Source: Octopus bimaculoides (lineage: Eukaryota). From it: DNA of 64,000 nt. Positions 24,036-61,699 of this stretch are shown piece after piece. Within the stretch, counting starts at the first letter, position 1; every line of letters begins with the position of its first letter. The translations under genes and the position numbers were made by a program. The notes beneath the pieces were generated by a model. It saw only the letters and a list, made by a program, of their open reading frames with translations, searched no databases and had not been told where the DNA came from. Where the stretch lies: assembly GCF_001194135.2 (NCBI RefSeq), contig NC_068999.1:51904758-51968757 (forward strand). The letters run 5' to 3'.

Positions 24036-24044
24036 GTTAGTTGT

Positions 24045-24260
24045 CATCATCATCATCATTATCATTGTTTCAGAGCCCACATTTCCATGCTTGCATGGGC
24101 CAGGCAGTGTCTGTTGAGACAAACTTACAGCCAAAAGTCCTTCCTGTCACCAACCCATATCTGTTTCCAAGCAAAGTAACATTTTGCCATGGCCAGACAT
24201 GTTTTCCCAGAATATTAGAAATGAATGACACTCCTACAATCATGTGATGTCAAGACAAGG
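24045..24260 (-). mobile_element. RTE-type 3' tail repeat
   Basis: (CAT)n...tttccatgcttgcatggg...cttcctgtcaccaaccc...tttccaagcaaagtaacatttt motif is shared with many copies in the window. Confidence 0.65.
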
Positions 24261-24882
24261 GCATGCACACTCACACAATTGAGGAGTTGCTTTTAGTTTC
24301 TGCTAACCAAATCCATTTACAAGGCTTTGGTCAGCTCAATGTGGTTGGGAAACAAACTTCTAAACTGCATAGAGTATCAAATATAAACAACACTAAAATT
24401 ACAATAGCAACAGAATGCAGTATCTCCTTACCCAAAAGACTGATTTGCATATTCACTAATGAACAACTGTTGCACTGCAACTGAGTGTAACTTCTACTGT
24501 GGCTACCCTGTGCTGTGACCACCATCAGAACCTTCAAACATAACCAAATACAGCACAGAGGATAAAAAACATGGTTTGACTGTTCCACATTACCCTGCCC
24601 AATAAACTGCTACATGACTAAGTTAATAGTATGGCCTGCCAACTGGCAGGAAAAGCATGATATATCAGGGACAAAGGATTTGTGGATTGTACCTAGTTAT
24701 TTAGCTGACTACCTCTTTGCCATTGGTGTGCTCAAGCAAGGTTGATCTGAGATGTTTAAACAACACCAAGAAACATGTTTAGTCAATCCAACTTTTGTTA
24801 ACTTCTTTTTATGTTACCTCACCTAATGTGAACTCTACTATTATCTCTACATCGGTAACCACTAATCTTCTTTATATATACA

Positions 24883-24982
24883 TACACACACACACACACA
24901 CACACAAACATACACACACACACACACACACACAAACATACACACACATACACACACACACACACACAAACATACACACACA
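24883..24982. repeat. Interrupted (CA)n microsatellite
   Basis: Read directly from the sequence. Confidence 0.9.
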
Positions 24983-25694
24983 CTTCGTCTATGCTCTCTT
25001 AATCTCTATATTTTAGCACATACTTCAAACAGCTAGCATAAGAACTGACAATTTTTTTAAAACTTGTAAAACTTTTTTTAAGAGTTAAAATACAGATCTG
25101 CAGTTATATTTTATTATTTAGAGAGAGAAAAAAAAATTAGATTAGAATATTTCATACCAAAACTAGCAACTTAGTAATATTTCTTGTCCTAACCAAAATG
25201 TATTGATCTTGTCTTAAGTGTTTACCTGCACATTTTTTTCTTTCTTTTCTCTTTCTTTTTATTTTTTTTATTATATTTTCTAGTTTAGCTTAGGTGCTAT
25301 ATTTTCACTTATGTAGATTTTTTGTAGATTGAACACTTAGAATTTATTTTCACTCATTAGGTTTCAGCACTTATATTCATTAAACAGCTTTCTTATAGGA
25401 CAGCAATGTGCTAATGTCAATAACTTCACCAATTTGCATTACTTAGATACTAAGTCATCACAGGTCTGGTCTTTTAATTCAGTTCAGTTTGTATTGTAAC
25501 GTATCCTTAAATCTCTTCACTGAGTGGTGATGCTGTTTAGTCCCTGATCAACTCTGATTAGCAGCTTAATGATAAAAATATTTCAGATTGAAAGAAATTT
25601 GGTTGCTATTTCTTGCAGGTCAGGTGACCTTAAGACTTCCTATTTGAGTCATTTTCTGTATTGTTTTTTTTTTTAAAACATCAAGAATAATTCT

Positions 25695-25935
25695 TATCAG
25701 TGAATTTGGTAGACAGAAACTGTTTGGAAACCTATTGTATGTGTCTGTGTTTCCTCCTCCACTCCTTGACAACTGGTATCAGTTTGTTTACACCCCTCTA
25801 ACTTAGTGGTCCAGCAAAAGAGAGCAATAGAATAAGTACCAGACTTCAATATAAGTACTGGGGTCGATTTGTTTGATTAAACACTTCACAGCGGTGCCCC
25901 AGCATGGCCACTGACTGAAACAAGTAAAAGGAGAA
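25695..25935 (+). mobile_element. Family A SINE 3' half
   Basis: ccttgacaactggtatcagtttgtttacacccc...gggtcgatttgtttg...gccccagcatggccac..gactgaaacaagtaaaag. Confidence 0.8.
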
Positions 25936-26900
25936 AAAAAAAAGTATCAGTAATTATATAATCTTTATCCTCAATTTGTTACCATATGAATAATTCAGGA
26001 AAGTTTTGGTTCTTAAATTTCTTTATGCATCTTAGAATGGAAGGTTGATATTTTTTTCTATTCTTTTAGCACTTCTCATAGTCTTACTGCGTTAGACTTA
26101 GCGCTGTTCCACTAAAAGTTCTTTGGAGAAGATTATATTTGTCTATGCAGGTTATACGGGCTCAGGAAGTTGATGCTTGATTCTGGTTTCAGTATCATTA
26201 AATTAATTGAGCAAATGAAAGCTGGTTCACAGGAACTGTTCCCAGGAGATCAGATACCTATTTTCCCCACACATATCTGAGCTTATGTCATCTACTCACA
26301 GACATTACGAAACACTTGCAACTCCACAGTCTTAAGCTAGTAATCCAATATATATTCATTCAATCTTGTGTTGAAAAGTTAATGTTAAGCAACTTAAGTA
26401 TTTATTGACTGGTTCCATTTATTCCATTATGGAAATATTTTCTTTACAATAAAGTATATTCACTTCTATACCATGTTCCGTTTACTCAGTATTTCAGCTA
26501 CTTACATCATTAAAAAGTATATATTCTCTATTTTGATTTTTATAAGATTTTTCTTTCAGTTTGATGCCTTTTTCTATCAAAATTTTGGTTGTTTTATGTA
26601 TCCAAAATATAAGGCATTGAAACTATACTTTTTTTCTTTTTCCAATTTTTCATATTTGCAATGGCTTGTCTTTTATTTATTCTTTTTTTTTTTGGTGGTG
26701 GGAGGCGGGGTGGTGGCAGTTTTCTCTCCAAAGTAAAGTAAATGGGTTGATTAGATCAGTTCATGTCAGATTGTGTTAGCAGTATTAATGCCCCGGCTCA
26801 GAAAGAAGCCAATATTTATTGCTCTAGCTCATGAAACAAGGAAACAAGTTCTTTTCAGAAGGCACCATATTCATATATGGTTTTAATGGAATAAAGCATA

Positions 26901-26901
<1 letters not shown>

Positions 26902-26946
<45 letters not shown>

Positions 26947-26956
26947 NNNNNNNNNN

Positions 26957-27000
<44 letters not shown>
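26902..27000. repeat. (CT)n microsatellite spanning a short N gap
   Basis: Read directly from the sequence. Confidence 0.9.
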
Positions 27001-27003
<3 letters not shown>

Positions 27004-27744
27004 CATATAAATGCATTTATAGGTGTCCACATATATTTATGTATAAAGAAAGAGCAAAAGAGATTCTGGTATAGTATGTTTAGAAAGCTATTGAATTAGT
27101 GGTATATTCTGGTGATTTCAAGATCCATCTTAGTAGCTATATTAGCTATTTAAAACATACATTTACTGTTCTATTACATTATTGTTTTTTGTTTTTTGCC
27201 TTTTTTTAAAATTATCAACTATTAAATTCTTTCATCATGCATTTACAAGCTATTTGCATAATATTCTATTCCATTTTATTGAAATATATAATGAAAGAAG
27301 TAAATATAACACCATGTGTGGCTGTGTGTGTGTGTGTGTGTGTATTAAATTATTCTATCGCAATAAAACTCTTAGTTTCAATACAGAATCTCAAATTAAA
27401 TTTCTTATCAAACAAATAGAACAAAGGTATTTCAAGTTTGGTTTCCCTTGTTTACTTACAATGTCCATCATGGCCACTATAAGTGGTTTAACATCTTTTG
27501 CTTTGCTTTTTGTTCCTGTCTGACATGTCTTTAAAACAAGCTCTTCCTCTGCAACTGCTCTTTTGTACTTACCCGTCCTCCCTCACAAATCCCAACTTCT
27601 CAAACTACATCTGTCTACTTTGCCATGGGAATTCTCTGCACTGTCTATCCAGCTGATGTGAAATCGAATCCGGCTTAGAGATACATCTATAATTTCCATG
27701 TGCCAGTAGCTGTCTGCTTTATCATGTATGGAATTTATGAGACG

Positions 27745-27855
27745 CAGGCATGGCTGTGTGATAAGAAGCTTGCTTCCCAACCACATGGCTTCAGGTTCCG
27801 TTGCACTGCATGGCACCTTGGGTTAGTTCTATTATAGCCCCAAGCTACCAAAAGT
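27745..27855 (+). mobile_element. Family A SINE head
   Basis: gcaggcatggctgtgtgataagaagcttgcttcccaaccacatggcttcaggttc. Confidence 0.75.
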
Positions 27856-30739
27856 CTTGTCTGATAGTTGTATGATAGGTAATGTGGTCCCATATGCCTT
27901 AAAAATAAAAACCAAAAAAAATATCAGATTATCAGTCATTAAAGTGTTGGATAAAATGATTTGCAGTAGTTGTTCTGATTGTCTGCATTCGGAGTTGAAA
28001 TCTTGCTGAGATCAACTCTGACTTCCATCCTTTTGGGGTCAGTTATAAAAGTATCAATTCAGGGCAGTGGATTGGCAAAACTTTTAGAGGGTTGGGCAAG
28101 TATTTGTTCTGGCTCCTTGCATTTTGATAGCAATGCCTGTGACAACACTGGTGACAAGCTGCATCGGACCATGTCAGTGGCCGTTCTCTTAAGTAAACAC
28201 CAGTGGTGTGAAGAAGAGAGATCTGCAAGCATGGGTGACTGCTAGTCTTGCTCAAAAAAATCTTGCCCCTGCTTGCACATATATGGACAGATGCATGGTC
28301 AACACTGACTGACAGAGGTCCTACAAAAAGGAAAAATAATAAGGGGGGGGGATCTTGGATGCCATTTGTTCATGGATCTGCTTAATTAAAGTAAACCTGG
28401 GACTAAACAACAACAATTTGCAAAATACTTTGTTCTAATCATGTTTAATAGTTTCTTTTTTCTCGACAATGTCAAACACCTCAAATACCTAATTGTTTCC
28501 CTCATTCACTTAGACTCAACTGGTTTATTTAGATTTACTTTACTTATGATCAATCTCAGTTCATTATTCCACTCATTGCACATTTATATCCTTACATATA
28601 TAGCAAATATATCTCAAGTAAATGGTATTAGATTGGTATTGACTGTGGCATGGTCGCCTTAAGTGTTGTCTCCCATAAACAAATAAATATATTCTCTAAA
28701 ACACTCACATGCACTGCACTATACTCACCCAAAATACTTCAATATAATTTCTCTTAATCTCAGAGGAATAAGTAACTTCAGAACAATGAGTATGTTCGAA
28801 AATATCTGCTATTACTTTTCTTTCTTCAAACAGCCACAGAAATAGGTTGTTTTTTGTTTTTGTTTTTTTTCTTCTCCCACACTTGATAAACTCTATCATC
28901 CAAAAATATTTGTATAAAAATATGATAATAGAAATTTTCATAATTTCTCTCACCATTCTACTTTTCTTTTTTCCCTCTTTTCCTCCCTCATTTAAACTTG
29001 AAAAAAGAAATAGCTGTTATGATGTCTTCATAATTAGTTCTGACTTGTTAAAACAATTTTTTAAGATGATTTTTCTAGTTAAGTATCAAATTTTTCAAAG
29101 AAAAGATATATTTTTCCCTAATCCAAGTTTAGCTACACCAGATAACCATGAATGTGACTTAAATATCTTTCTATATATTTGCTATTGATTGCTTCCATCC
29201 TCTGGAATATTTTTTGTCTTCTGTTATTTTCTTGTGTCACTTCAGTACTTCTACTAAGAGGTGAACTTGAGAATTTATTTTGACAATTTATTTTTATTCA
29301 GCCATGATAGAATTCCACATTGAAATATCATTACTTAATGGGTTTACAGAAATCTTTGTCATATCCCTATATAAAGCTAATTAATTTCTACACTCTATAA
29401 TTTTGATCCCTTAAGTTTCTTCATGCAAAATCAAATGAAGGCAGCGTCAACTCAAGCTTTACATTTTCCACTCATAGCTTGTTGTTCACCTTTCTTTTAT
29501 TATATGACTTTCTGCCAACCATTGTGACTGTGTTGTCTATTAAAACCTTATTAAAAGCACTTCTACTATCTCAGTCATTCAATATCCTTCATTTTGGTAT
29601 TTAAACTATAACTCTGGCTGGAAGGTTTTGGCTGTGCAATCTCTCCTTTGCTCAAGGTGAGCACTGACTAATGGAAAGAAATATGCTTTATTTCTTCATT
29701 CTAGATTATATTTCAGTCTATATACTGCCTTGTTGAATGCGTTATACAATATATGTTTTACCAGTTAACTATTATGTAGAAAATGCTAAGAATTCGGTGC
29801 TATGATAAAGCACTCTGCTATAATTAACGATTATATTGAAGTGAAACCTAAACAAAAATTTCTTGGTAAGGGCCAGATGAAAGCAAATACCTTTTTTTTT
29901 TTTCATATGCCCATCACAGTTCTGTTAATATACAGCCACCTCAACCCTGTTAAAATGACTAAAGTAACTTATTTTATCAATATTATCAAAAATTGTTTGA
30001 AAATGTTTTGTTTGCCACTTAACCTACACCTTTGAAGTAAACAACCCACCCATGAAATTTAATCATAGCAATTACTTTCCTACTTTAAACAATCATAGCA
30101 AACTTTGATGAAACACTTTGCTGGATTATCTTCAGTTAACACACTTTTTTTTCCTTCAGCTGTTATCAACTGATTAATTTAGTTGATGTGGTTTTTACTG
30201 CTGTCTGCAAATGTGCACATTTACTAGGATTTTAAAATTCTAAAGTAGGGTATACTTTGTAGAATGCATTTGTAGAATAACTGTTGGTAGTAGTAAAACT
30301 AAAATCATTTCAAAATTGTCAGTCCTAAACATTCAGTATATACTTCCAAATACTGGAGTGAAATAGAACTGTTTGTTTTTCGTTATCTAAATCAATGTTA
30401 TCTATTAAACGAAGGTACAGCTCATTACTCAATGAATACCAGTAAAATTACTGATAATATTTATTATGCTTATCAGTTTGTTTTGTTAACCACCTCACTC
30501 ACTGAGTTATTACTGGTCATTAGTTCTGTTTGAATTTTTTTTTTTTTTCCATTTTTCTCTATATTGCTACTATCATCCGTATGGTGTTTAGTTCATTATG
30601 TAAGTAGCTGTTGAAATTAATATTGCATTAACAGCTAACCATACAAAGCTTTATGTGGTTCTCTATCATTTTAAGCTGTTTGATTCATTCAGTTTTTCTA
30701 TCTTGCCACCTCTTCCACTACCACCTCCTCCTCATCAGC

Positions 30740-31255
30740 ATCATCATCGTTTTAACATCCACTTGCATGTTTGGACAGAGTTTATTGAGACAGATTTTCT
30801 ATGGCCAGATGCCTTTCTGTTATCAGCCCCACCTGTTTCCAAGCAAGGTAATATTTTCTTATGACCAGACATTTTCATCGTGCAGTGTCAAGGCAAGGAG
30901 ACAAACATATGTACGTTCACACACACACTTTCCGGAGGGACAAGTTAAAAAAAAGAAGCCATATCTGGCCACTTTTCTCCCCATATATTATACATCAACC
31001 CTTCCTGAATATTTTTCTTTAGTTCCTGGTAAACAGAATGTATTTTGCCAGATCAACAATTTGGTTTTTATATATGCATCCACACACACACATTCATACA
31101 TAGAACCTCAGTTTCCAAATACCAAATCCACTCTCAACACTGGCTAGCCTGAGGCTATAGTAGAAGACACTTATCCAAAGTGCCACACAGTGAGACTGAA
31201 CCCAGAACCGTGTGGTTGGGAAGCAAACTATTCAACCACATAGCCACACCTGCTT
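30740..31255 (-). mobile_element. RTE-type tail (30740-30900) and family A SINE head (31095-31255) just upstream of Rab6 exon 2
   Basis: catcatcgttttaacatccacttgcatg...; gaggctatagtagaagacacttatccaaagtgccacacagtgagactgaacccagaacc. Confidence 0.7.
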
Positions 31256-31488
31256 CTCTACCTTTCTCAACCATAGAGCCACACCTGTGCCTAATAATGT
31301 ATTAGGATATTTAAACATGAGACATGAAGTGTTAATAGTTTCTTGCACACATTTTATGCAATTTATTTTTTATAAATATTTTCACAAATTTGCAACTAAA
31401 AAGGGAAACATTTGTAAGTTTTATTCATTATATTCAATTGCTACATATTTACCTTATTTAAACAGTGTTAAAATAATTACTTATATAA

Positions 31489-31632
<144 letters not shown>

Positions 31633-33584
31633 TAATTATAAATGTTGTTGTTTTAGAAAAGGAATCACAATTTTAATTCTGCAGTCAGTTTTTTTTTTTA
31701 CCTGTTTCTTTCTTTTTCTTTTCTTTCTCACCAGTAAAGAAATACATAACTTCACTGCCATAAAGTGGAGAAGAGCAAGTGAGAAAAAATGTCTTTTGAA
31801 AACTCTAAATCTAGGGTTGCAGGTCTATTTAGTCCACTGTACTTTAAAGAATTTTACATGGCATTTCTTACAGAATGAGGATTTGGTATTTTATTGTTAA
31901 TAGCAAAACACTAGTAAAGTCTTCATATGTAGAGACAGTCAGAACATCTGAACAATTATACATGTCTGTGATTTCTAATGTAAATGTTTTTAAATACTCC
32001 AAGAAAACAAAAAGTATCTGCTGAAAGTACCAAACAGGATTTTGGATTTATTTATTTGACTGTCTCCCACAAAATGTGTGACTTTTTGCTAATGTTTGCA
32101 GTCATAATTTTGTTGACAGATGTTCATTTCCATTTCTTCCTGTAAAGAGAGCTTGAGGGTTGTGACAGACACCTCCTTGCCCCAAAGACATAGTTAGAAT
32201 TTCTGACAGAAGCTTGATGAGATTTCGGCTTTTGGACAGCCTGTTGACCTTAGATAACTAATGACCTTTTCTTAAATATTAAGAAACAGGTAGGAATTTT
32301 CTGATTTTGAGTCTTTTGAATTTTGACAATTGCAGAACTGATCTTTATATGATTAAAAAGAAGAAAAAAAAAGATGCTTGGTTGTAACAAAATCTATTGG
32401 GGTTTGCATGATTTCTTTTTGAAATGTGACTTCATTATGCGCTACTAAAATTGCAGATCAGATTTTCAATAATTTCCAAGTATGGTTTGGAATATATTTC
32501 TCAATTCTTTTGTGACTGTTGGTATGCATGCACATGTTTGTAATTCTAATTGCATTTGACTGGCTTTGTGTCATTAATGCTTTCTGATCACTCTTGTGAT
32601 TGAACCCAATTGTCAAGTAGAACTTGCTGATCAAAATTCTTCTGCCAACTCAATTTAGAGCAATGCTATTTGCTAGTACAATATCTATTGTTAGCTTGAT
32701 ATTTAAGTATCTCCTGTGCATTATCTTTGCAGTAAAACAAAAAAAGCAAAGCAAAATTCTAATTGCGCACTAATTTTAGTATTTTCAATCTAAGTTGTCA
32801 TTGATATTTTGTTAATGAAGTTCTATTTCCTCTGTGGCTTAAAAGTTTCAAATAATATCTATACTCTTAATTTTACACTTTAATAGTTTTCATTAATGAA
32901 AGTTATTTGCCACAGGTTTTCATATAATTTCCATTTTTAGATTCCTTTTCACTTGATTTCAACAAAGATAATGAGCTTTTCTTCAATTTTCTTTAAGTGT
33001 ATGTCTCTAAAAAGGAGGTTTCAAGGAAATGATTAAAATTGAAGCTATAGATGGGTTTTCATTGCAAATGTTTTTCAAGAAAAACATCATTATCATTTTT
33101 CTCTTCTTGGGTTATTTAACTTCAGTAGCTTTTCTCTTTTTGATACTTGCTTCAAGATAAATTTTTCGAGATGTTTCTGATTTCTTCAGAATATAAAATG
33201 TTTTAAGTGAGATGTCCTTAAGGCTTAGAAGGGAGTGTTACTTCTTGTGTATTAAATCCATACCCTTTTATATGATCAGTCATTATTTTTAAACTACAAT
33301 CTTATAGTTACAAATAGTAATGATGTTAAAAATAGGACCATCATCATCATTTTTACGCTGACTTTTCTACTGATTTTTCTTGCACTGGAACTGTGTGTAG
33401 ACATGTGGAAGCACTTCCATGAAGAAACATGATTAAAAATGGGGAAAATATTACCTTGCCTGGAAATAGATGACATTTGGCAACAGGAAGGGCATTCAGC
33501 TACAGAAAATCAGTCTCAAACAGATGGAAAAGTGGACACTAAAATGATGGTGATGATAATAATGTATGATGGGCTTCCATGCTG

Positions 33585-33693
33585 TTTCTATTTAAGCCTG
33601 TTACATATTCTATCAGTCTCTTTTACCAAACTGCTAAGTTACAGGGATGTAAACACACCAACACTGGTTGTCAAGTGGTAGTGGGACACAAAC

Positions 33694-33735
<42 letters not shown>

Positions 33736-33860
33736 ATGCACGCGTGCACACACATATGATGAGCTTCTTTTAGTTTCTGTCTACCAAATCCACTGACAAG
33801 GCTTTAGTCAGCCTGAGGCTATAGCAGAAAACACTTGCTGAAGATGCCATGTAGTCATGC
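33585..33860 (-). mobile_element. Family A SINE with central (TA)n
   Basis: cttcttttagtttctgtctaccaaatccactgacaaggcttt...gaggctatagcagaaaacacttgc. Confidence 0.75.
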
Positions 33861-35304
33861 CTGCACCTAACTATAATTACTCTTTCTGAAGTTACTTCAA
33901 AATTGTAATAATCTCTATAGAACTGCTTCTTTATCAAGATCAGTGAACGTTTGTCGAAATATTTTTTGCAGTTCAAAAGTCTGCATTAAGAAATATATGA
34001 ATATGTATCTCCTCACATTGCTGTTATTCTTATCTTTTGATGAAAGACTATTTAACCCTCAATAATCTATCTAGGTTGCACTACCTCTCTTTTGCTTTGT
34101 GTTCTTCAATGTTTAAACATCTAAGAAATTGAGGAAAAAAAAAAAAAAAAAGAAGAAGAAATCTAAGCATTCTGAAGAACTTGACAGCATTAAAAAAGCA
34201 GTTTCTTAAATTTATTTCACTATATATAAATCCATATCTTATGTTTTCGCATCAAAACTGTAATTCAGAAGAAAACATGCATACATTACTTTACATTCTG
34301 AAAACAAATTTTCTCTGTAAAACTGCAAAATCCTTTGAAACTATTTTGATATCTATACAATAATGGTCAATGAATTCTTAAACATCTTATTTCATTCAAA
34401 CCCATCTATGATTATTTCCAGTGTTTTCAATGTCAGAAATAAGCAACAGTACAGTAAAATGAAGTTATTAGAAATGAGCTAATCATATTCTTTGCCTTAG
34501 CAATCAAGGGAGACTACTACAACTGTTTGTGTATTATTAGGTTTCATCAGTAGAAATATATCCTTTGTCATTGCTTTCTGGCACTGTAGTATCTCACTCA
34601 CATTTTTATTATGTAAATATGTGGTCAGTGCTCTCTATAGTTAACTGTTTTGTTGGTGTCTCTCAATAATTAAATTTTCCATTAATCTCAGTTCCAAGTG
34701 TCACTTGATGTTTCTTTTTAATTTACATCTCTACATAATAAGCTAGTTAACAATGCCTCCAAGTTGTGGAGAAGGTTGTACAACAAAAATTAAAAGTGCT
34801 TAAAATTATCTCCCTGTTCTTACAAGGACCAATTTTTAACTACCCCTTAGGGATATATTTCCTCATATTCACATTTAACCTGAAAAATAGTTATTTCTGA
34901 TATTGAACATATTTGAAATAATCTAAACCACCCTTTTATTATTTCAGGCAGAGTATTGTTGTTCTTATTATAATTGTCAGGTTATGTTATTGTGCTGGTT
35001 ATTTTTCCTATTTCATCAAGCATTTTAATGAGATATCTTTATATTCCATATAATCCCATATAATAAACGGCAGTTCCTAAACTGACTAACCATCAAAGTG
35101 GTTGTATGAAGTTTATGCAGCCTACAACTTTCATTTGAAAGTGTCTATCTGTAGATTTTAATTTAAAAAATGCAAGTGCTATCAAATATACTTAGCTTAT
35201 TAGCATTAAGATAGTTCCTTTCTTTTTGTAAGGTATTCTTGTTGTTTGTGGAGTTGATGAAAAAAATGTTTGCTATTGTAGGGTGTCCTTAACATAGATT
35301 TTCC

Positions 35305-43201: not shown

Positions 43202-44047
43202 TATTATTTCTCCACGTGCGGTTAATACAACCCCACTATTTACTGACTTATATATATATATATATCAGATCTAAGAATTTTAACTCACTAGTGAACTCTA
43301 GATCTGAAATGTTCATCGGTTGTAAGCATATACCTAAGTTCCTGTTGAAGAATTGGGAAGTGCTTCCCCTACCAGATTGAATAACTGTACCATAGGATCA
43401 AAGACACTATCTCTTCAGCCTTATAATTAACTGTCTAAAAAAAATAACTCTTATTCCCCTTTTGCTTCTTTCTGATTTCTTTTTCGTTTTCCAGTTTTCC
43501 AGCCTTCTACTTTTTATATATATTTACACTATATGTGTGTGTGTATTGAAAATACATCCATCTCACCAGAAATGAGGTCCTAAAAGCATATCATTCATAC
43601 CTATATCCTGCCACCCAATCTGTACCTGTCAAGCCTTCCCCACAACTCATCTTTGTAACATCCATACCTCTTTCATCCTTCTAACTAAGACTCTATTTCC
43701 TCAACTGTTGTAATTATATGAGAGCAGAAATACACACATTCCATCCCCTTCTTTTCCGCTACCAGTTATCCCTCTCCTTAGAACCAATTTCCTTGTCACT
43801 CAATCCGCATCATCCCTTATATACTTTTTTTCTTTTGTGGTGGTGGTTCAAGAATTACAAGGAACTCTATGTAGGGATGGGCTCAATTATCAGCTTTTAC
43901 TGAATAATTAACTTGCTACATGTGCTGAATACCTTGTTGTGTTTGTACTTCCAAACACAAATATATTTATTTTTTTTACTTATAGCCATATAGATATACA
44001 CATATAGATTCTTTTTACATATTTTACATAACTATTTTCCATTTCAG

Positions 44048-44101
44048 GCCACAATTGGAATAGATTTCCTATCCAAAACGATGTACCTAGAGGACAGAAC
44101 T
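44048..44101 (+). CDS. RAB6: Rab6 coding exon 3: [18 protein letters not shown] (switch I/effector region)
   Basis: Acceptor ttttccatttcag ends at 44047; 54 nt, phase 0-0; donor gtaagt at 44102. The peptide is the Rab6 effector loop. Confidence 0.97.
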
Positions 44102-45029
44102 GTAAGTTAACATTTTAATCCAACCATAACTCTTAACACATCAATTTTTTCATATTTTATCTAAAATGTCATTTATTATAGTTTAAATACTTGTTGCTAC
44201 CATGGAAATTTTCTATTCCAGCCATTCTTAGACAAGATAAATTGATATTTTAAATCATTAAAACTTTTTAATTTTTTTTCCTTTGCTTTATGTGTTAATA
44301 TAATTTTTTTAACTTCTTTATATTAGAAAATTTACATTTAGCACTATTAGTTTCATTTAGCTTTTATTTTATTTTTTTCTTTAATTGACGTAAGATTCTT
44401 TTTTTAGTTAATGGCTGGTTGTTTTAATACTTATCTTTATACTTTTAATTAATATTGATTGATTTTAGAGAAAATACATTTTGTAGTTCATGTTCAGATG
44501 GTATCAGAACACTTAGCATCTTCCATGAAGATGTTTATTGTATACATTTAAAATATGATGTTATATGAATTCTGTCTACAGTGTCCCTTTGTTATTTACA
44601 ACAGCAGCGAGTTGGTTGTAATAGGTCTCTGCCAAACTAATTTATTCGCAGATTTACGTGTTTCTATGTTCTTAGTTCAAATCTCATTAGGTGTGAGTTC
44701 ACTTTCTTTCCATCCTGGTTTTGGTGGATCAGTTCAACCTACCTTCCTTACAAAGTTTTGCTTTGTACGCAGCCAAAAGAAATCATTTTGCATGATTGAT
44801 GTATATTGGTCAAAAGCAACTATACATTGTATTTAAAACTATGAGGCACTATTGTGAAGGGAAAATGCAAATGACAATTATGTTAGTTCAATAATGTTGT
44901 AAGAATGAATAGAAATAAAAGCAGTCTGTAAAATATAACTAATCATTTGGAGTAAATTAGAATTAAAAGTAAATGCATAATGATTAGTGGGGATGAATGC
45001 AGTGATGAGAAGAAAAAAAATCAATGATA

Positions 45030-52870: not shown

Positions 52871-53708
52871 AAAATGAAAAATAATAATAAGGCAGAATGC
52901 TAAACTGGAAGCATATTTTAATAAAGATTTCTAACCGGCTTTCTTTGCATAGCAAATTTTCAAGAAGAGGGNNNNNNNNNNNNNNNNNNNNNNNNNNNNN
53001 NNNNNNNNNNNNNNNNNNNNNNNNNNNNNNNNNNNNNNNNNNNNNNNNNNNNNNNNNNNNNNNNNNNNNNNNNNNNNNNNNNNNNNNNNNNNNNNNNNNN
53101 NNNNNNNNNNNNNNNNNNNNNNNNNNNNNNNNNNNNNNNNNNNNNNNNNNNNNNNNNNNNNNNNNNNNNNNNNNNNNNNNNNNNNNNNNNNNNNNNNNNN
53201 NNNNNNNNNNNNNNNNNNNNNNNNNNNNNNNNNNNNNNNNNNNNNNNNNNNNNNNNNNNNNNNNNNNNNNNNNNNNNNNNNNNNNNNNNNNNNNNNNNNN
53301 NNNNNNNNNNNNNNNNNNNNNNNNNNNNNNNNNNNNNNNNNNNNNNNNNNNNNNNNAAAAAGGGTTAAAAGTTTGCGTTAAGCTGGAAGTGTGGTGTCAA
53401 AACAGGAAGTGTGTGTAAGGGGAGACAAATCTTTTTAGTTGGAGTTATGAAGATTTGTCTCCCCTTACACACACTTCCTGGTTTGACACCACTCTTCTTG
53501 CTTAACACAAACTTTTAACCATTTTTTAAAACCTAACACAACTCTCAATTCTCATGCATCCTTATTTTTCCAACCATTATATACATGGATTACCATTGAA
53601 CTTCAAAAGCTCAAAGACAATATAATGTATTGGTATAGTTATTTTTTTTATATATTATTTTCTTCATTTTGTACTTCTTTGTAAAAAACATTTTCATTCT
53701 CCCTCTTC
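52869..53708. mobile_element. Foldback element copy 2: left arm (with gap 52972-53356), 16-nt loop 53434-53449, right arm truncated at 53708
   Basis: 53357-53433 pairs with 53450-53526 at 71 of 77 positions; starts ta|ggaaaatg. Confidence 0.8.
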
Positions 53709-53717
53709 ACACACATA

Positions 53718-53905
53718 TATGAGGGGGTGCTGAAAAATTCCTGGGTTCAAGGGTAACACCAAAGGCCTGTTTGGCAACCCAGCCTGAGTTCTTTTACAGG
53801 GCTTGGAAAAACTCAAGGATCACTGCAATAAGTGTGTGAATCTGAGAGGGTAATATGTTGAATAAAATCATAATTAATTGATCCTCTTTTAAACACTCCT
53901 TTGTA
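53718..53905 (+). mobile_element. Mariner-derived MITE
   Basis: TA-flanked degenerate TIRs tatgagggggtgctgaaaa / ttttaaacactcctttgta; the interior reads FFYRAWK/GLEKLKDHCNKCVNLRG*YVE* like a mariner transposase C-terminus. Confidence 0.75.
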
Positions 53906-55320
53906 TATAGGGAGAGAGAGCAAGAGAGAAGGAGGGAACAGCCATATGTGCATAGCAGAAGTACAATTAATTATTTAAGAATTGAAATTGGTATTGTATT
54001 TTACCCTCCAGCTTCACCTACAGAATCTGACAACAAACATATCTTCCATGCCTTATCCCTTCTAAATGACAATGCTATTCAGCTTCATTAAACTCTCAAA
54101 ACTTGAAGAAATGGTTACAAAGTATTATTTACTTGTTGGTATTCAAAATTATTAAAGCTTTGAGTTTCAGTCTTACCATTGTTATCTCCTTCATCTATTA
54201 TTTACCTTCTGGCTTTACATCTCCAGACTAATAAATAGAAATGTTTCATTTTCAGAAGTCACTTTAATGCTATTCTCTAAGGGGGTTTTNNNNNNNNNNN
54301 NNNNNNNNNNNNNNNNNNNNNNNNNNNNNNNNNNNNNNNNNTCTAATTAACTACAGCTGGGTTTAAAGCTGATCTCTCTCGCTATAGGAAATCATATGTT
54401 ACAGTAACAGTCACCTCAGTTCAAAGGAGACTCGTCTTAACACACAGAACCAACAGACTAAAAGGGATAAAATGTTATTGATTTAATTCTGATAAATAAC
54501 GTCTACCAGATTAACCTATTTTGCTTTGATATTAAGTGTAAATCTAGTATTATTTTTACTTTGCCCTTTTTTAATCTAGGCTTCTTTCTATGCACATTAT
54601 ACAAGTTTTCCTTTCCTTCTACAGCCCATTTCCCCTTCTGTCTTTCATACATGCAGATGGATATGGATGATGCCCACTTAGTTTCTAATATAGCTCCATT
54701 TTTTTTTCCTTCACCTAAATTCTTAAAGTGTATTTTAATCCAGACAAAGAATTTTCATATTGTCTGTTTTGATAGTGAATATGTCATCTCTTAATAGTTG
54801 TGGCTGCAGAGTGATATTTGTAACCAGCTTACAACAAACACTCCTCATGTTTTCCAAATAAGTTGTTGTTTAATCTGTTTGTTTGGACAACCCAAGAGAA
54901 TCCTTAAAGAGTGTATATTATGATGTAAATCTCAAGAAATTTCAAGAATAATAAATGTTAGTTCATTCAGTCAACAGCCTTTCTTTCTCTCATGAATTGT
55001 TTGGGATAAAATATAATTTTCATTTATTTTCTTTTTAGAGCTCAATAAAAAATGAGTAAATTATTTTATTCAAAAGGAGGCTAATTTTGCATAATGGTTT
55101 AATATCTATATTTTCTTATCATATTCCATCTAGCAAGTGCTTTTTTTTTTATATATAGATAGATAGATAGATATTTGCTTGGACTATTGTTCCTAACAAA
55201 AACTGGATATCAATCTTCTTGCAATCAATGATATCATTAAAGAGAGAAAGAGATTTGGTAAGATTTGCTGGAAGATTAATTAAGAACTTATTAGTGACAC
55301 TGCTATGGATTGACCCAGCG

Positions 55321-55546
55321 TAACCCTTTCCTTACAGTTCTATTGAAATACACTGCCTTTATTTCAATCAATTTTGAAAATAATAAGAAGTTTATTAAAA
55401 TAACTATGACAGTATTAACCTAAGGTTTGGAACATAAATTAACATGAAATTTTGATGGAGGGTTTTAAGTTAGATCCCTTTAAAACAGGAAGTTTGTATC
55501 ATAAAACCAAGGGTGGTTTCAGGCAGACTGATATCTGAAGGGGTAA
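55321..55546. mobile_element. Degenerate piggyBac-like MITE related to P2
   Basis: taaccctttc...gaaggggtaa termini; internal taaaataact...aacataaatt shared with 10755-10968. Confidence 0.6.
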
Positions 55547-56777
55547 ATATAGATCAGCCATTCTGTAAAAACCTATATTGACAAGCTTTTATCTCATAGA
55601 GGTTGTTGCTTTTCTGACCTTCAAATGTTATGCAGGGTGGTGTAACCAAGTCAGGAAACTGAGGAGGTTCAGTCAGATGATGATGAGTAGTAACCTCTCT
55701 GTTAATTTATGCCTGTTTATTTATATATATATGTGTGTGTGTGTAAGACAAGGAGAGAAAGATACTCCTCAAATTTGCATGTTTCTCTTTAAATTCTAAA
55801 TATATATATTCTCCTTTCAGTCCTGTGTTAACCAATAATAAATTTAATAATTATTTTAAAGATAATATCTGCAATTTTTCTACATTTTACATCTAATTTC
55901 TTTGCTTGCTACCTCTATGGGAAATATGAAGAAGACATTTATGATTTTTTTGTTTATTTTTTTTTAAGAAAGTCTCTTGCAAACATTTTATCTTATTTTT
56001 ATTTATTTAAGCATCAATGATATTTAATTCCTCAGAGTGTTCAACATAGCACTTTCTCAAAATTTCCTAAAACACTGTCGGTAAATAAATGCTTTTATAA
56101 ACAAACAGTTGTCAGGTTGAGAGAAATTGCATGATGATAGTAGGATATCGAGCTCATTGAAAGCTCAAAGGTCACCTTTACTCTGCAATGCAAATCTTAA
56201 GAGTTTCACACTTGGTTTATGAATAATTCCACCTGATGAATTTGATAGATTGTATTTTCTCTGTCTCAGAGGCTTCAACTCTTATCAATATTTCCTCATC
56301 TGGCATAATTTTTTGAACTCTAACAAGCATATGTGACCGTGTGCATGCATAGAAAGTAAAATATCAAATCCGATACCAGCCTTCTCACATTCGGCATCAT
56401 TCAGCATGCTGGCTGTAATCTCTATTCAAGTCTTTTACCTCCCTGTAGATTACAGTGATCATGTAAGTATATGGATTCTAAGAAAGTGCAGATATGGTAT
56501 TGACTAGTTTCTTATTTACCTACACAAATATATTAATCAATGCAAGCATGCATGAAATATGGATATCCTTCTGAATTAAAAAATACATAATATGGGGAAA
56601 AAACGAAAAACAAAGTTGTGTGTGGTGGGGGCATGCATAATAATAGTTTGGGTGCCAAAACAACAAAATACACAATAGGCACAAGCATGGCTGTGTGGTA
56701 AGAAGCTTGCATCCAACCACATGATTCCAGGTTCAGTCCCACTATGTGGGACTGAACATTTGATATCCCTCAATCCC

Positions 56778-56778
56778 T

Positions 56779-56840
<62 letters not shown>
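56778..56840. repeat. (CT)n microsatellite after a family A SINE head (56680-56760)
   Basis: Read directly from the sequence. Confidence 0.9.
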
Positions 56841-56844
<4 letters not shown>

Positions 56845-57849
56845 CTCCTATCTCTCATTTCTCTCTTTCTGGTAATCTGAGTTTGCAACCCCTGGTATGG
56901 GAGCTATGAATGTCACAGTTCCTCTATTTCTTTATTAGTTGAGGTCAATAGGGATAAATCAGTTGTTGATTGATACTGTTGATTATGAAAAAGTCCATTC
57001 ATTGACTTTGTATTTGAATTGTGGAGTGAGACACTGAGTGAACAAGTTCAGTTTTGCTTCTTTTTACTCCAGAAATTTTCTTACTCTTTCCACATAAAGA
57101 TGCTTATTCTATTCATTTAATCCAGAAATACTTCAATTTTTGTCGTATCCTTGGAAACCAGTCCAATTTTCTATTGGTATGATTAGCTTTCAGCTGAATA
57201 AAGAACGAAATAAAAAAATGGAATAAACTTATAGCTTAAAAAAATTAAAAAATGAACTACGCCAACGTTTTCTTTTTCTAATAAATTTTAAATGATTCCA
57301 ATTTTTATTATACTCCTATTTGTTTATTTCATAGGAATTTATATTACAAGCAAACAACTTGTACTATTACACTGTGTTATCTGTTGGACTGGTTATTGTG
57401 GTTTTCATTTGTAAATATTTAAAGCAATATGAACAAAAGAAATAAAGTTTGATCATTAAGAAAATAATTGAAAATTAAGATTTTTCCTGAACAGGAAAAT
57501 AGGAAGCTATAGTTTTTATGGCTGTCCTAAAGATATTAGAGATGAAAATGAAACAAAAAGACTTTAACTGGCAGAGGACTGATGTATCAAATAATAGTAG
57601 TAATGGTAATTTTTTGAAGAAAGGTTTATTTTATTTTAGCGTAAGCATTGAAGGACCAGACAGATTGTGGCCATGAATGTTCTATTCGAGGCCCTCCCTT
57701 TATTCAGGATAAAAAAATTAATAAGTTAAAATATTGATTGGAAGGAAAGCCCACTTTCTCCTTATCACTTTAGATATTCTTGGCAGTCACCATGATAGAT
57801 CGCTGACCACAACATTAAAATTTTTTTTCTCCTTGTTTTTCTCCTTATT

Positions 57850-57886
57850 TCTTTCTGTTGAAGAGCGTAGCTTGAAACATTAAAGA
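57850..57886 (+). ncRNA. Degenerate minimal type I hammerhead-ribozyme fold within a Penelope-like remnant (about 57640-57977)
   Basis: Stem I TCTTT/AAAGA, core CTGTTGA, stem II GAGC-gta-GCTT, GAAA, then C-ATT. The core has an A-to-U change, so activity is doubtful. Confidence 0.45.
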
Positions 57887-57997
57887 CTTTCTCTATTCCT
57901 GAGTGTTAAACTAATACATCCTTTTGTTGTTTATACCACCTGTCCTCGTCTGTTGTTTTTTTTCATAAATTCTCCCATATATATATATATATATATA

Positions 57998-58148
57998 TAT
58001 AATCATAAATATATAGGGATTGACAGTAACCTGCTTCTCCAACATACTGAGAATTCAGAAATAGCAGTCAAAGAACTACTGCTATTTCTGAATTCTCAGT
58101 ATGTTGGAGAAGCAGGTTACTGTCAATCCCTATATATTTATGATTATA
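57998..58148. repeat. Perfect 71-bp inverted repeat with 9-nt loop
   Basis: 57998-58068 is the exact reverse complement of 58078-58148 (checked base by base); loop caaagaact. Confidence 0.97.
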
Positions 58149-58220
58149 AATTTTACCGAAAAAGGTTTTTTTCATACTGAGCTACCCGGCAGAATCGTTA
58201 ATTATTAATTTTATTACTAA

Positions 58221-58433
<213 letters not shown>

Positions 58434-58905
58434 TAAATAACCTTGACATTGATATTGCATTATTTGGAGGCTTTGCTGTCAACATATATAAATGGCATTG
58501 CTCTTAGACTGATGGAGGTGGATGGCGAGAAAAGAAACTCTTTCATTTGTTTTGTTTTTTTTCTGTCTCATGTTATTTGTAAATTTAATTTTTGGTAATT
58601 ACTTCAACAATATTACAATTATTTTGTTTCCAGGATCAATAAATCAATACTTTTTTTTTTTTTTTACCATTAAGAGCTGTGTAATTTATGACACAACAGT
58701 GATGTATGAATTAAGATAATTTTAGTTTTGAATCGATTGTTTATTTATTACATCCAGTCTTCATTTCAGTTTTAACACCTAATTGGCTTTTAAGAGATTG
58801 TTTTACTAATGAAAAAGGCATGAAAGTTTCACTAAAGAGTTTGGTTTTTGCATCATAGTACAGTTATTATAACCATTAAAAAAAATACACATATACTTTT
58901 ATTAA

Positions 58906-59100
<195 letters not shown>

Positions 59101-60389
59101 TAAAAGACATTTTGAAATTCTTCATTTATTTTTCTTAATTTACATCTTGTCATGATCTAGAATGTTTTGATTTATGCAAAGCTTAACATTATATTACAAA
59201 TACGATGCTAAACACAGTCGCCATTAATAAATTGTACTCTTCACGATTGTTGAGATTATATGTTGACTATCCTATATAATTTGAACTGATAACTGTGACT
59301 TGATCTAGTTTGGCAGGTGATTTTTCCTTCCCAATGAAATTCACTGATTGCATTCCAAACAAAGCCAGTTGTTAGTTCACTTGCTCTTAGCAGATTTGTC
59401 ATTTTCTGATGCTGTCTCTCGCAGACTGGAATATATTTCTATAGCACATATACATGGGATGTTCAGCTACTGTGGTTGAAATAATTGTGTTAGATCTCTT
59501 CAAATTAGATGCGGCTGCTCACAAATGAATATAAGTATTCAACTGTCAAAGTAGATTTAAAGATATTTGATCTTTTGAATCTCCTGACAAATATCGTATC
59601 TAATAGAACCAGACCACTTGATGCATTCAAAAGATTTCCTGTAAAGATGAATTAGAACATATGTACTGGATGTAACTTGTTGTTTTCTAGTTTGCTCCCA
59701 TTGGCACAATTTCATTTTCGTGTTGGTAATTTTTGTTTGTTTATCTATTTGTATTTTTATATTCCTAAACACACTTTATTTTAGACTAGGAAAAGATGCG
59801 ATAAGAAGAGAAAAATCAATATATATATATATACATATATATATANNNNNNNNNNNNNNNNNNNNNNNNNNNNNNNNNNNNNNNNNNNNNNNNNNNNNNN
59901 NNNNNNNNNNNNNNNNNNNNNNNNNNNNNNNNNNNNNNNNNNNNNNNNNNNNNNNNNNNNNNNNNNNNNNNNNNNNNNNNNNNNNNNNNNNNNNNNNNNN
60001 NNNNNNNNNNNNNNNNNNNNNNNNNNNNNNNNNNNNNNNNNNNNNNNNNNNNNNNNNNNNNNNNNNNNNNNNNNNNNNNNNNNNNATATATATATATATA
60101 TATATACAATAGGAGCAAGTGATACAGGTGATTTAAACTACAAGTACAGTTATTAGAAATTAAAAATAAAAGGCTTTATCTTTTGTGCAAAGTACAATAG
60201 AATAGCTGAAGAACTATCTATCTAACATATTTTGGCTCACTCTGTGATTACCTACATTTTAATGTGTTTGTCAGTTGCATCAGTAAAATATTATCTGTTT
60301 AAATAACTCCTTCAAAAATTGCAGTTTGCAAGTGTAAGCTACTCTAAAACTCCTGTGAAAGCTTATTAAAAAGCTATTGATTTTGCATA

Positions 60390-60790
60390 ATAATAATAAT
60401 AATAATCCTTTCTACTAAAGGCACAAAGCCTGAGATTTTGTGGGGAGAGAGCTAGTTAATTTCATTGACCCCAGTGCATAACTGGTACTTATTTTATTGA
60501 CCTTGAAACAGTGAAAAGCAAGGTTGACCTTGACAGCATTTGAACACAGAACATAAGACCACAAGAAATTCCACTAAGCAAAGGGGAGAGTGGAATGGCA
60601 GAATTGTTAGGGCATCAGACAAAATTGACTCATTATTACATTCTGACTTCAAATCCTGCTCTGGTCTACTTTGTCTTTCATCTTTCCAGGGTCTATAAAA
60701 TAAAGTACCAGTCAAGTACTGGATCAATGGTGTCAATAAAAACTCCACCTCACCTCTTAAAACAGCTAGCCTTGTGCCTAAGTTAGAAAT
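60390..60790. mobile_element. Head-to-head pair of family B SINEs (minus 60390-60580, plus 60583-60790)
   Basis: actggtacttattttattgacc on one side and ggtctataaaataaagtaccagt on the other; both end in cttgtgcct/ctttgtgcct. Confidence 0.75.
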
Positions 60791-61699
60791 GGATTTTGGC
60801 AATCCTTTTATTAATTCTGATATGCACACATCAGTCAAGCGGATAAGAAACGGAGTTTTCTTGTCATAGTGATTGAGTTTATGCCCTGCTCCAAATGTTG
60901 TCTCTCTAAATTTCACTTACCTAAAATTCACATGTATATTTGAAATTTCTAGCACTACTAGTATATATATATATATGTAATAAACTTAGATTAGTTTTCT
61001 TTTGAGGCAGGGGATCTCAGATAACTGAAGCTTGCAGAATTTCAAACAGTCATTTTTTTTTTTTTTCTATTAGACTACTTATTTCCATCTCAATAATTTA
61101 ACATTTTCTCAGAAATGGTACAAGAATTTGAATGAAAGATAACTTGATGGGTTAAGCTATATAGACGTTTACCACCTTATTATGTATTATTGTGTAAGAA
61201 AAGTGAAAGTTTCACAGATATTTCTGCTGTTGACTGCAGCATGTGGAGAGTAAATCTAAGATTGTGCAGAAAGGTTACATAAAATATAGAATTATCCTTA
61301 GGCTGTGGTAGCTAAAATATCATTTTTTTCTTCTTTCCATTTTTGACACAACTTGAAATAGCCTACCAAAGGATCTTAAAATGCATTTTTTGTGTAGCCT
61401 GATATAGATATGTGTGAACCATTGATGCATGTGTGTATGTATTTTCAAAATCTTATCTTGTACCATTTTGAATACAAACTTTATATAAATCTTATATTTT
61501 CAATATATTTGTTTTCTCCAACAGTATTTAGTTTTATCTGCAGGTGTTTTTAAAACTGAAAAAAAAAAATGATGTGCATTATTTAGTAAAAAAAAATTAG
61601 TAGTCTGTATCCTTGTCTATTTTTATTATTTTACATCCATTTTACTACTCTAGCTTCAGTTGAAAAGATCTGTAAATTTGCATATTTGTGTTCTTTTAT

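What the first reader, a model, noticed from the sequence alone, without database searches (positions are those of the whole stretch)
57998..58148. Perfect 71-bp hairpin 171 nt upstream of Rab6 exon 4
The arms have zero mismatches and a 9-nt loop, whereas most other repeats here are visibly decayed. That implies a very recent origin, arm-to-arm conversion or selection. In pre-mRNA it would be a long perfect duplex: a substrate for ADAR hyper-editing or Dicer/Drosha, and a possible editing-inducer element beside an exon. It starts in a (TA)n tract next to the Penelope-like remnant, so it may be a collapsed long-TIR MITE or a template-switch inversion. As DNA it could extrude a cruciform.
Basis: partly seen in the sequence, partly recalled or inferred. 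Interest (0 to 1): 0.7.

Follow-up and report, generated by a model that had tools for sequence, protein, structure and literature searches.

The report
Unsupported fold-back of a common repeat
The perfect 71-bp hairpin is in the assembled sequence, but it consists of two head-to-head pieces of a very abundant young repeat, and no sequencing read or contig checked contains the join between them, so it is most likely an assembly or library artefact and not a functional RNA hairpin.

Summary
Arms 57998-58068 and 58078-58148 are 71 nt with no mismatches, and the loop is 9 nt (CAAAGAACT). The hairpin ends 171 nt upstream of Rab6 exon 4 (58320-58425).

The arms are not unique sequence. The whole stretch 57790-58236 is high-copy repeat. 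Each arm 31-mer sits at the capped depth of 25,000, against about 42 for single-copy sequence. The arms match the family majority at every position, so their perfection needs neither selection nor gene conversion.

Normal family copies read arm + CAAAGAACT + ACTG and then continue as ATTTCAAAAC... The window instead turns back at that native CAGT-N9-ACTG mini-hairpin. This is the geometry of a snap-back or template switch.

The turn-back junction (loop to right arm) was not found anywhere. It is absent from 10 informative contig sets of the species, including four runs of the 2015 sample. It is also absent from one related species, from three raw DNA runs (about 4,500 arm reads, 1,155 of them taking the canonical continuation) and from one RNA run.

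Best explanation (about 0.57): gap closure through a high-copy repeat used a snap-back chimera. Main rival (about 0.3): a real, very recent fold-back that is private to the reference animal.

It is not a MITE with these arms as inverted ends, and it does not score as a known miRNA. There is no evidence for editing or small RNAs. Interest is low.

The parts
57790..57976 (.). Left-flank high-copy interspersed repeat, present here as an older, diverged copy
   Evidence: Summed contig depth rises from about 40-85 (single copy, 57700-57771) to 10^5-10^6. The window differs from the family majority at 57817, 57873, 57879, 57900, 57904 and 57965. Long single-copy contigs stop at 57811-57816.
57977..58000 (.). 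(TA)12 tract abutting the left arm
   Evidence: The same '(TA)n + AATCATAAATATATAGGGATTGA' join (57984-58021) also occurs in other loci, for example in a 526-nt single-copy-depth contig that matches only these 38 nt.
57998..58068 (+). Left arm: a segment of the abundant repeat family in its 'F(+)' orientation
   Evidence: Perfect reverse complement of 58078-58148. Its 31-mers sit at the capped depth of 25,000 in every run of the species. No position has an alternative base at 10% or more of depth.
58069..58077 (+). Loop CAAAGAACT. It belongs to the canonical family sequence that follows the left arm.
   Evidence: A 32-mer covering 58046-58077 sits at capped depth. Family reads match the window through 58081.
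58065..58081 (+). Native mini-hairpin CAGT-CAAAGAACT-ACTG of the family. This is the switch point where the window departs from all reads.
   Evidence: 279, 416 and 460 DNA reads and 21 RNA reads leave the window at 58081 and continue as ATTTCAAAACTACAAATTATTACTCCAGAT. Contig loose ends read ACTACTGATTTCAAAACTACAAATT.
58078..58148 (-). Right arm: the same family segment in the opposite orientation
   Evidence: About 1,000-1,900 raw reads per run cover it, but none extends leftward into the loop.
58149..58236 (-). Continuation of the family copy beyond the right arm (the family's upstream part, reverse-complemented)
   Evidence: A single exact 50-nt contig covers 58131-58180 at depth 1790 (X1, single copy about 42) and 460 (X6, single copy about 10). 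A 58-nt contig covers 58167-58224 at depth 1477.
58241..58299 (.). (TA)n(CAYA)n microsatellite between the repeat and the exon. It could be a tail or the other half of the target microsatellite.
   Evidence: There is a sub-threshold 'mir-297' Rfam hit here, which is a low-complexity artefact.
58320..58425 (+). Rab6 exon 4 ([36 protein letters not shown])
   Evidence: tblastn with human RAB6A gives 92% identity over 36 aa. Splice signals are cag| and |gtaagt.

Best explanation
The hairpin is a fold-back join between two head-to-head pieces of one very abundant, recently expanded interspersed repeat. It exists in the assembly but most likely not in the genome. The left arm plus loop plus ACTG is the canonical family sequence. 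The right arm plus 58149-58236 is the same family in the opposite orientation. The two are joined at the family's own mini-hairpin CAGT-N9-ACTG. That is where a 3' end ...CAGTCAAAGAACTACTG can snap back on itself and be extended by a polymerase.

Shown: the anatomy, the copy number, the identity of the arms to the family majority, and the absence of the junction from all reads and contigs examined.

Inferred: a rare snap-back chimeric molecule from one of the many copies supplied the roughly 26 junction words. Gap closure across this unassemblable repeat block (57816 to about 58300) then accepted that path because it was the only one connecting the two unique flanks. The true locus probably holds one or two ordinary family copies. 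As an artefact it has no function.
For: (1) All of 57790-58236 is high-copy repeat. Long single-copy contigs of independent animals end at 57811-57816, so any assembler must bridge this block.
(2) The window is a gapped short-read scaffold with seven N runs.
(3) Arm words are at capped depth 25,000 against about 42 for single copy. The arms equal the family majority at every position.
(4) Family reads leave the window at 58081 and continue as ATTTCAAAAC...: 1,155 DNA reads and 21 RNA reads.
(5) There is zero depth on the loop side of the junction at 100% likeness in X1, X5, X6 and X13 (no piece longer than 32 nt), in X9, X10, X16 and X2 and in X12, X7 and X3. These contig sets retain words of depth 1-13.
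(6) There is zero depth on 58066-58075 in three raw DNA runs and one RNA run, while about 4,500 reads cover the right arm.
(7) Tight fold-back junction contigs of the same family appear in one run of sample S6 but not in another run of the same sample (58047->58102 and 58081->58202 in X9, not in X6). This suggests, but does not prove, library-made snap-back chimeras of this family reaching single-copy-like depth; contig fragmentation could also produce the difference.
(8) Chimeric reads formed at inverted repeats during library preparation are a documented artefact class (PMC10908179).
Against: An assembler needs reads to write a junction, and I could not see the reads it used.

The block from the hairpin to the microsatellite is flanked on both sides by (TA)n (57977-58000 and 58245-58270). 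This looks like a real insertion into a TA microsatellite.

One fold-back junction of the same family (58026->58087) is shared by four runs from three studies and so is real. The process therefore also happens in vivo.

It is not proven that the 2015 sample S6 is the animal that was assembled.

Perfect hairpins can be under-represented in PCR-based Illumina libraries.

Raw-read sampling was only about 0.8x per run. The probability of seeing no junction read from a real homozygous single-copy locus is about 0.15.
Confidence: 0.57

Rival explanations
1. A real, very recent fold-back insertion or rearrangement that is private to, or rare outside, the assembled animal. In one version, a 5'-truncated copy of the repeat (sense on the + strand: right arm, 58149-58236, microsatellite tail) acquired an inverted duplicate of its first 71-84 nt during insertion, when the nascent strand snapped back at the CAGT-N9-ACTG mini-hairpin and self-primed, as in hairpin-primed second-strand synthesis or twin priming. 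In the other version, a replication or break-repair template switch occurred at the same motif. In both versions the perfect arms reflect youth.
For: The junction uses 4-nt microhomology at a native inverted motif. (TA)n lies on both sides of the block. Other fold-back junctions of this family exist at single-copy depth. Some are shared between studies (58026->58087 in X2, X5, X6 and X9; 58028->58119 in X5 and X2). Some appear in single animals. The exact subfamily is nearly absent from the related organism B, so the family is young. Fold-back templated inverted duplications at breaks and short-range template switches are established mutational processes (PMC11724301, PMC7954356).
Against: No junction word occurs in four runs of the 2015 sample (the likeliest source of the assembly) or in at least 6 other animals. 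No raw read spans it. Other tight-loop fold-back junctions of the family are seen at normal depth in the same libraries, so hairpin dropout alone is a weak excuse.
Confidence: 0.3
2. Real and fixed in the species, but invisible to short-read data because a 71-bp perfect stem with a 9-nt loop blocks library PCR and sequencing.
For: Established knowledge: long perfect hairpins amplify and sequence poorly. The fold is very stable, at -128 kcal/mol.
Against: No junction word was found in any of the 10 informative species contig sets, although these sets keep words of depth 1. The five runs whose single-copy depth could be read sum to roughly 155x or more. Palindromic reads and tight-loop junction contigs of the same family are recovered in these same data. 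A short-read assembly could not then have reconstructed the hairpin either.
Confidence: 0.07
3. A functional intronic RNA hairpin: a miRNA or endo-siRNA precursor, or an ADAR-recruiting editing-inducer element for Rab6 exon 4.
For: A perfect long duplex would be a substrate for ADAR or Dicer if transcribed (general knowledge). Generic sub-threshold hits to perfect-hairpin miRNA models: MIR5649 68.7 bits against a gathering score of 100, mir-883 37 against 85.
Against: All Rfam hits are below the gathering score and are of the kind any perfect hairpin gives. No RNA read crosses the junction. The arms are ordinary copies of a repeat, and the 21 RNA reads that leave the window at 58081 agree fully on the canonical continuation. 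The junction is absent from genomic DNA of other animals, so it cannot be a conserved element.
Confidence: 0.03
4. A canonical member of a MITE or foldback-transposon family whose terminal inverted repeats are these arms.
For: The arms are multi-copy. TA-rich flanks could be read as TA target-site duplications.
Against: Family members continue from the arm and loop into ATTTCAAAAC... and do not turn back. No class of reads joins an internal region to the right arm. The hairpin form is found in no run.
Confidence: 0.02

Closest known systems
Snap-back or inverted-repeat chimeric reads from library preparation, and their capture by gap closure
   Same: The junction lies exactly at a short native inverted repeat. 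The inverted part is a perfect copy of the adjacent strand. The junction is absent from independent read sets. It sits in a high-copy block that contigs cannot cross (PMC10908179).
   Different: The palindrome in the window stops after 71 nt at a (TA)n tract instead of running on into the family's upstream part. A simple artefact therefore needs a second join in low-complexity TA sequence. The reads used by the assembler were not seen.
Short-range template-switch mutations, quasi-palindrome to perfect-palindrome conversion, and fold-back inverted duplications at breaks
   Same: A 4-nt microhomology at a quasi-palindrome seeds copying of the opposite or own strand and yields a perfect inverted repeat (PMC7954356, PMC11724301, PMC7202029).
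   Different: Reported events are mostly 5-34 bp, up to a few tens of bp. Here 71-84 nt are copied, and the event is unsupported by reads.
Twin priming and 5' inversions of non-LTR retrotransposon insertions
   Same: Head-to-head arrangement, a microhomology junction, 5' truncation, and simple-repeat tails pointing outward (PMC11702581 discusses twin priming; the classical description is recalled from general knowledge).
   Different: Classical twin priming inverts a different, more 5' part of the element and does not duplicate the same 71 nt. That this family moves by reverse transcription was not shown: no tRNA-like head was found and no Rfam hit.
MITEs and foldback elements
   Same: Short, AT-rich, hairpin-forming, next to TA repeats, built from multi-copy sequence.
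   Different: The multi-copy unit is not a hairpin. Only this one assembled locus has the two arms facing each other.

Membership tests
miRNA precursor (Rfam MIR5649, mir-883, mir-3167, mir-192) | Covariance-model score at or above the family's gathering threshold | tested here: not met
   Best hit 68.7 bits against a threshold of 100. The others score 26-37 against 54-86. These are the hits any perfect hairpin gives.
miRNA or endo-siRNA locus | Small RNAs of a defined size mapping to the stem | not testable with these tools
   No small-RNA run was available.
MITE or foldback transposon | The inverted arms are the termini of a multi-copy element, so other copies also carry both arms facing each other | tested here: not met
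   1,155 DNA reads continue from arm and loop into ATTTCAAAAC... No reads or contigs join the loop to the right arm.
MITE or foldback transposon | Target-site duplication flanking the element | tested here: inconclusive
   (TA)n lies on both sides of the larger block (57977-58000 and 58245-58270), but it is a microsatellite and does not immediately flank the right arm.
Template-switch or snap-back inverted duplication | The switch point lies at a short pre-existing inverted repeat or microhomology, and the new arm is an exact copy of the neighbouring strand | tested here: met
   The family sequence is AGCAGT-CAAAGAACT-ACTG-ATTTC. The window switches after ACTG into the complement of AGCAGT... 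The arms are 71/71 identical.
Template-switch or snap-back inverted duplication (as a genomic event) | The junction is present in genomic reads of the organism | tested here: not met
   Zero depth on the junction in 10 informative contig sets of the species (an eleventh, X29, laid nothing), one related species and 3 raw DNA runs.
Retroposon 5' inversion (twin priming) | The element is a retroposon with a 3' tail and target-site duplication. The inverted segment comes from a more 5' part of the element. | tested here: inconclusive
   A simple-repeat tail is possible (58241-58299). There is no tRNA, 7SL or 5S head. The inverted segment duplicates the same 71 nt and is not a more 5' part.
ADAR hyper-edited dsRNA or editing-inducer element | The hairpin is transcribed as one molecule and shows clustered A-to-G differences | tested here: inconclusive
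   No RNA read spans the junction in X24. No A>G site at 10% or more at 98% likeness, but that filter would discard hyper-edited reads, and only 6% of one run was read.
Assembly or gap-closure artefact | The junction words are absent from reads of the species although the neighbouring words are present, and the locus lies in sequence that contigs cannot cross | tested here: met
   Words of depth 1-13 are retained, and unique contigs end at 57811-57816.
Assembly or gap-closure artefact | The assembly's own records show a closed gap or a chimeric supporting read here | not testable with these tools
   No AGP file, gap-closure log or full set of the original libraries is accessible.

The most novel reading that the evidence does not exclude
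The repeat family systematically produces head-to-head fold-back copies in vivo by snapping back at its own CAGT-N9-ACTG mini-hairpin and at other sites. This would scatter young, polymorphic, perfect intronic hairpins through the genome, this one beside a Rab6 exon included. Such hairpins would feed ADAR or RNAi pathways and differ between individuals.
Probability: 0.1. Interest if true: 0.45.

Novelty: not a real feature. Interest (0 to 1): 0.12.

Why it matters
If taken at face value, the hairpin would be annotated as a candidate miRNA, siRNA or ADAR element next to a conserved exon. The check shows it is two consensus pieces of a common repeat, joined by a junction that no read supports. 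It should therefore not seed functional hypotheses until long reads confirm it.

There are two practical lessons. First, a perfect short-loop hairpin inside a high-copy repeat block of a gapped short-read assembly needs read-level validation. Second, arm perfection in a young repeat family carries no information about selection.

If the minority reading (a real, private fold-back) is right, it would be an ordinary example of template-switch or snap-back mutation. The only added point of interest would be that this family seems prone to it.

Tried and rejected
I worked on stretches ending at or before 58236.
(2) A junction-only query to the run index failed because it held too few sampled words. 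An 81-nt query had 3 sampled words and no run held more than one, which is uninformative.
(3) I tried to identify the organism through Rab6. The protein is too conserved: the best named hits are scallop Rab6 at 96%, and cluster listings did not include the source species. The organism stays coded as 'organism A'. It is probably a mollusc with about 2.3-2.5 Gb of contigs. This is an inference.
(4) I tried to collect other family copies. There are none in the window. The family ORF has no protein homologues. The hairpin ORF is not on record. A metagenome scan found no exact match. The family's class (SINE or other) therefore remains undetermined.
(5) No tRNA-like head was found, and Rfam gave no tRNA, 7SL, 5S or hammerhead hit at E<=1 in 56000-60000.
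(6) The 'Penelope-like remnant' has no Pfam support in ORFs of 53500-58000 or in the ORF at 60497-60916.
(7) The largest 'inverted repeat' in the window (59820-60106) is only an N gap flanked by TA repeats.
(8) At first I discounted the missing junction contigs as graph-cleaning loss. I revised this after seeing that words of depth 1-13 and other single-copy fold-back junction contigs are kept.

Full report
**Observation.** The window contains the hairpin exactly as reported. Arms 57998-58068 and 58078-58148 are 71 nt and perfectly complementary, or 74 nt at 99% if extended. The loop at 58069-58077 is CAAAGAACT. A 53-nt arm core occurs only at these two places in the 64 kb, with 0 expected from shuffles. 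Complementarity ends abruptly outside the arms. As RNA the stretch folds at -128 kcal/mol, z = -22. Rab6 exons lie on the + strand at about 31531-31623, 44036-44104, 58320-58425 and 58978-59100. The hairpin therefore lies in the intron, 171 nt before exon 4. The window is a gapped scaffold with seven N runs of 10-466 nt.

**What the arms are.** I laid contigs of independent sequencing runs of the same species on 57700-58236. Single-copy sequence (57700-57771, depth about 43 in X1 and X5, about 10 in X6) gives way at about 57790 to sequence matched by 20,000-34,000 contigs per run. Long unique contigs stop at 57811-57816.
- At 100% likeness every arm 31-mer is its own contig at the capped depth of 25,000.
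- Between 57969 and 58160 no position shows an alternative base at 10% or more of depth, so the arms equal the family majority.
- The repeat copy to the left (57790-57976) differs from its family majority at six or more sites and is older.
- The right arm runs on into 58149-58236 as part of the same family. One exact 50-nt contig spans 58131-58180 at about 45 times single-copy depth.
- The window holds no other copy of the family.
- In a related species (X13) the exact subfamily is almost absent, so the family expanded recently.

Two young copies of such a family would be identical without any selection or conversion.

**The junction.** Canonical family members read arm-CAAAGAACT-ACTG and then ATTTCAAAACTACAAATTATTACTCCAGAT. 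In three raw DNA runs 279, 416 and 460 reads leave the window at 58081 with that continuation, and 21 reads do so in an RNA run. Contig loose ends say the same. The family thus carries a native mini-hairpin, CAGT-N9-ACTG. The window follows the family through ACTG and then switches to the complement of ...AGCAGT. This is what a 3' end ...CAGTCAAAGAACTACTG produces if it folds back on its own CAGT and is extended. There is no class of reads entering the right arm from an internal region. The family is therefore not a TIR element with these arms.

**Is the junction in any data?** No.
- Contigs: at 100% likeness no contig longer than 32 nt lies on 58030-58125 in X1, X5, X6 or X13. On the 48-nt stretch 58058-58105, depth on 58058-58075 is zero in X9, X10, X16 and X2 and in X12, X7 and X3. 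X29 laid nothing and is uninformative. Contigs of depth 1-13 are retained in these sets.
- Coverage: this covers four runs of the 2015 sample and at least six other animals. The five runs whose single-copy depth could be read (X1, X5, X6, X2, X9) sum to roughly 155x or more.
- Raw reads: I chose the stretch 58066-58113 so that canonical reads cannot cover the loop. Depth on 58066-75 is zero in three DNA runs and one RNA run, while 992-1,900 DNA reads per run cover the right arm.
- Limit of the raw reads: they sample only about 0.8x per run, so this part alone gives a probability of about 0.15 of seeing zero reads for a real homozygous locus.

**Fold-backs elsewhere in the family.** Contigs joining a left-arm position to a non-mirror right-arm position occur at single-copy-like depth.
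- 58026->58087 is present in X2, X5, X6 and X9 and so is a real locus.
- 58028->58119 is present in X5 and X2.
- 58047->58105 appears only in X1.
- 58047->58102 and 58081->58202 are in X9 but not in X6, which is the same sample.

Fold-back junctions of this family therefore arise both in vivo and, apparently, in libraries. In libraries the huge copy number lets a hot-spot chimera reach single-copy-like depth. The raw DNA libraries carry GATCGATC ligation junctions and look like Hi-C. They also contain a few palindromic reads at 58078-58081.

**Explanation.** The most likely account (about 0.57) is as follows. The block 57816 to about 58300 could not be assembled from unique words. Gap closure then accepted a path through generic family words plus about 26 junction words supplied by snap-back chimeric molecules, because that path connected the two flanks. 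Inverted-repeat chimeras of this kind are documented (PMC10908179).

The main rival (about 0.3) is a real, very recent fold-back that is private to the assembled animal. It could have formed during insertion (self-primed or twin-priming-like) or by a replication or repair template switch (PMC7954356, PMC11724301). In its favour are the (TA)n on both sides of the block and the existence of real fold-back loci in the family. Against it is the absence of the junction from the 2015 sample.

Less likely readings:
- Fixed in the species but unsequenceable (about 0.07).
- A functional RNA hairpin (about 0.03). Rfam hits are all below gathering score and no RNA read crosses the junction.
- A canonical MITE (about 0.02, effectively refuted).

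**Limits.**
- The organism is coded and was not identified. Rab6 is closest to molluscan Rab6.
- The class of the repeat family is undetermined.
- No long reads or small-RNA data were available.
- It is not proven that sample S6 is the assembled individual.

**Verdict.** The sequence observation is confirmed, but its biological reality is doubtful. If the hairpin is real, it is an ordinary young fold-back of a common repeat. Interest is low.

Noticed in passing
window 53357-53526: A second hairpin: 77-nt arms at 92% (31 nt perfect at 53403-53433 and 53450-53480) with a 16-nt loop. It starts at the first base after an N gap (52972-53356). It is unrelated in sequence to the finding. It could be a MITE-like element or a contig-end effect.
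   Followed up: partly
window 59820-60106: The largest 'inverted repeat' reported in the window (143-nt arms, 96%) is only a 240-nt N gap flanked by TA repeats. It is an artefact of the repeat finder treating N as matching.
   Followed up: yes
window 57790-57976: The sequence left of the (TA)n tract is itself a very high-copy repeat, present here as a diverged copy. The family majority differs from the window at 57817, 57873, 57879, 57900, 57904 and 57965.
   Followed up: partly
window 58025-58120 (joints seen in contigs of other loci): Many contigs join a left-arm position to a non-mirror right-arm position, for example 58026->58087, 58028->58119, 58047->58105 and 58025->58103, at about single-copy depth. 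Some are shared across studies. Some are specific to one run of a sample. The family seems prone to fold-back junctions, both real and library-made.
   Followed up: partly
window 58108-58119 (loose ends of raw reads): A related subfamily diverges from the right arm after ...GAGAAGCAGGTT into CGTCCATCGATC. In the raw DNA libraries these reads carry palindromic GATCGATC ligation junctions (GGTTCGTCCATCGATCGATGGACGAACC), which suggests Hi-C libraries. GGTTCGTCC resembles a Pol III B box, a hint that the family may be SINE-like.
   Followed up: no
window 58234-58302: A sub-threshold Rfam hit to mir-297 (46 bits against a gathering score of 90) falls on the (TA)n(CAYA)n microsatellite just upstream of exon 4. 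This is a low-complexity match, not a gene.
   Followed up: yes
window 58166-58173: A T7 run preceded by ACCGAAAAAGGT lies inside the family's right-flank part. It would act as a Pol III terminator if the + strand were the element's sense strand, so 58078-58236 may be composite.
   Followed up: no
window 57984-58021: The join '(TA)n + AATCATAAATATATAGGGATTGA' also occurs in other loci, in contigs of 526, 1695 and 194 nt at single-copy depth that match only about 33-38 nt here. Family copies that end in or abut TA microsatellites are therefore recurrent. A mis-join within TA sequence is possible.
   Followed up: partly
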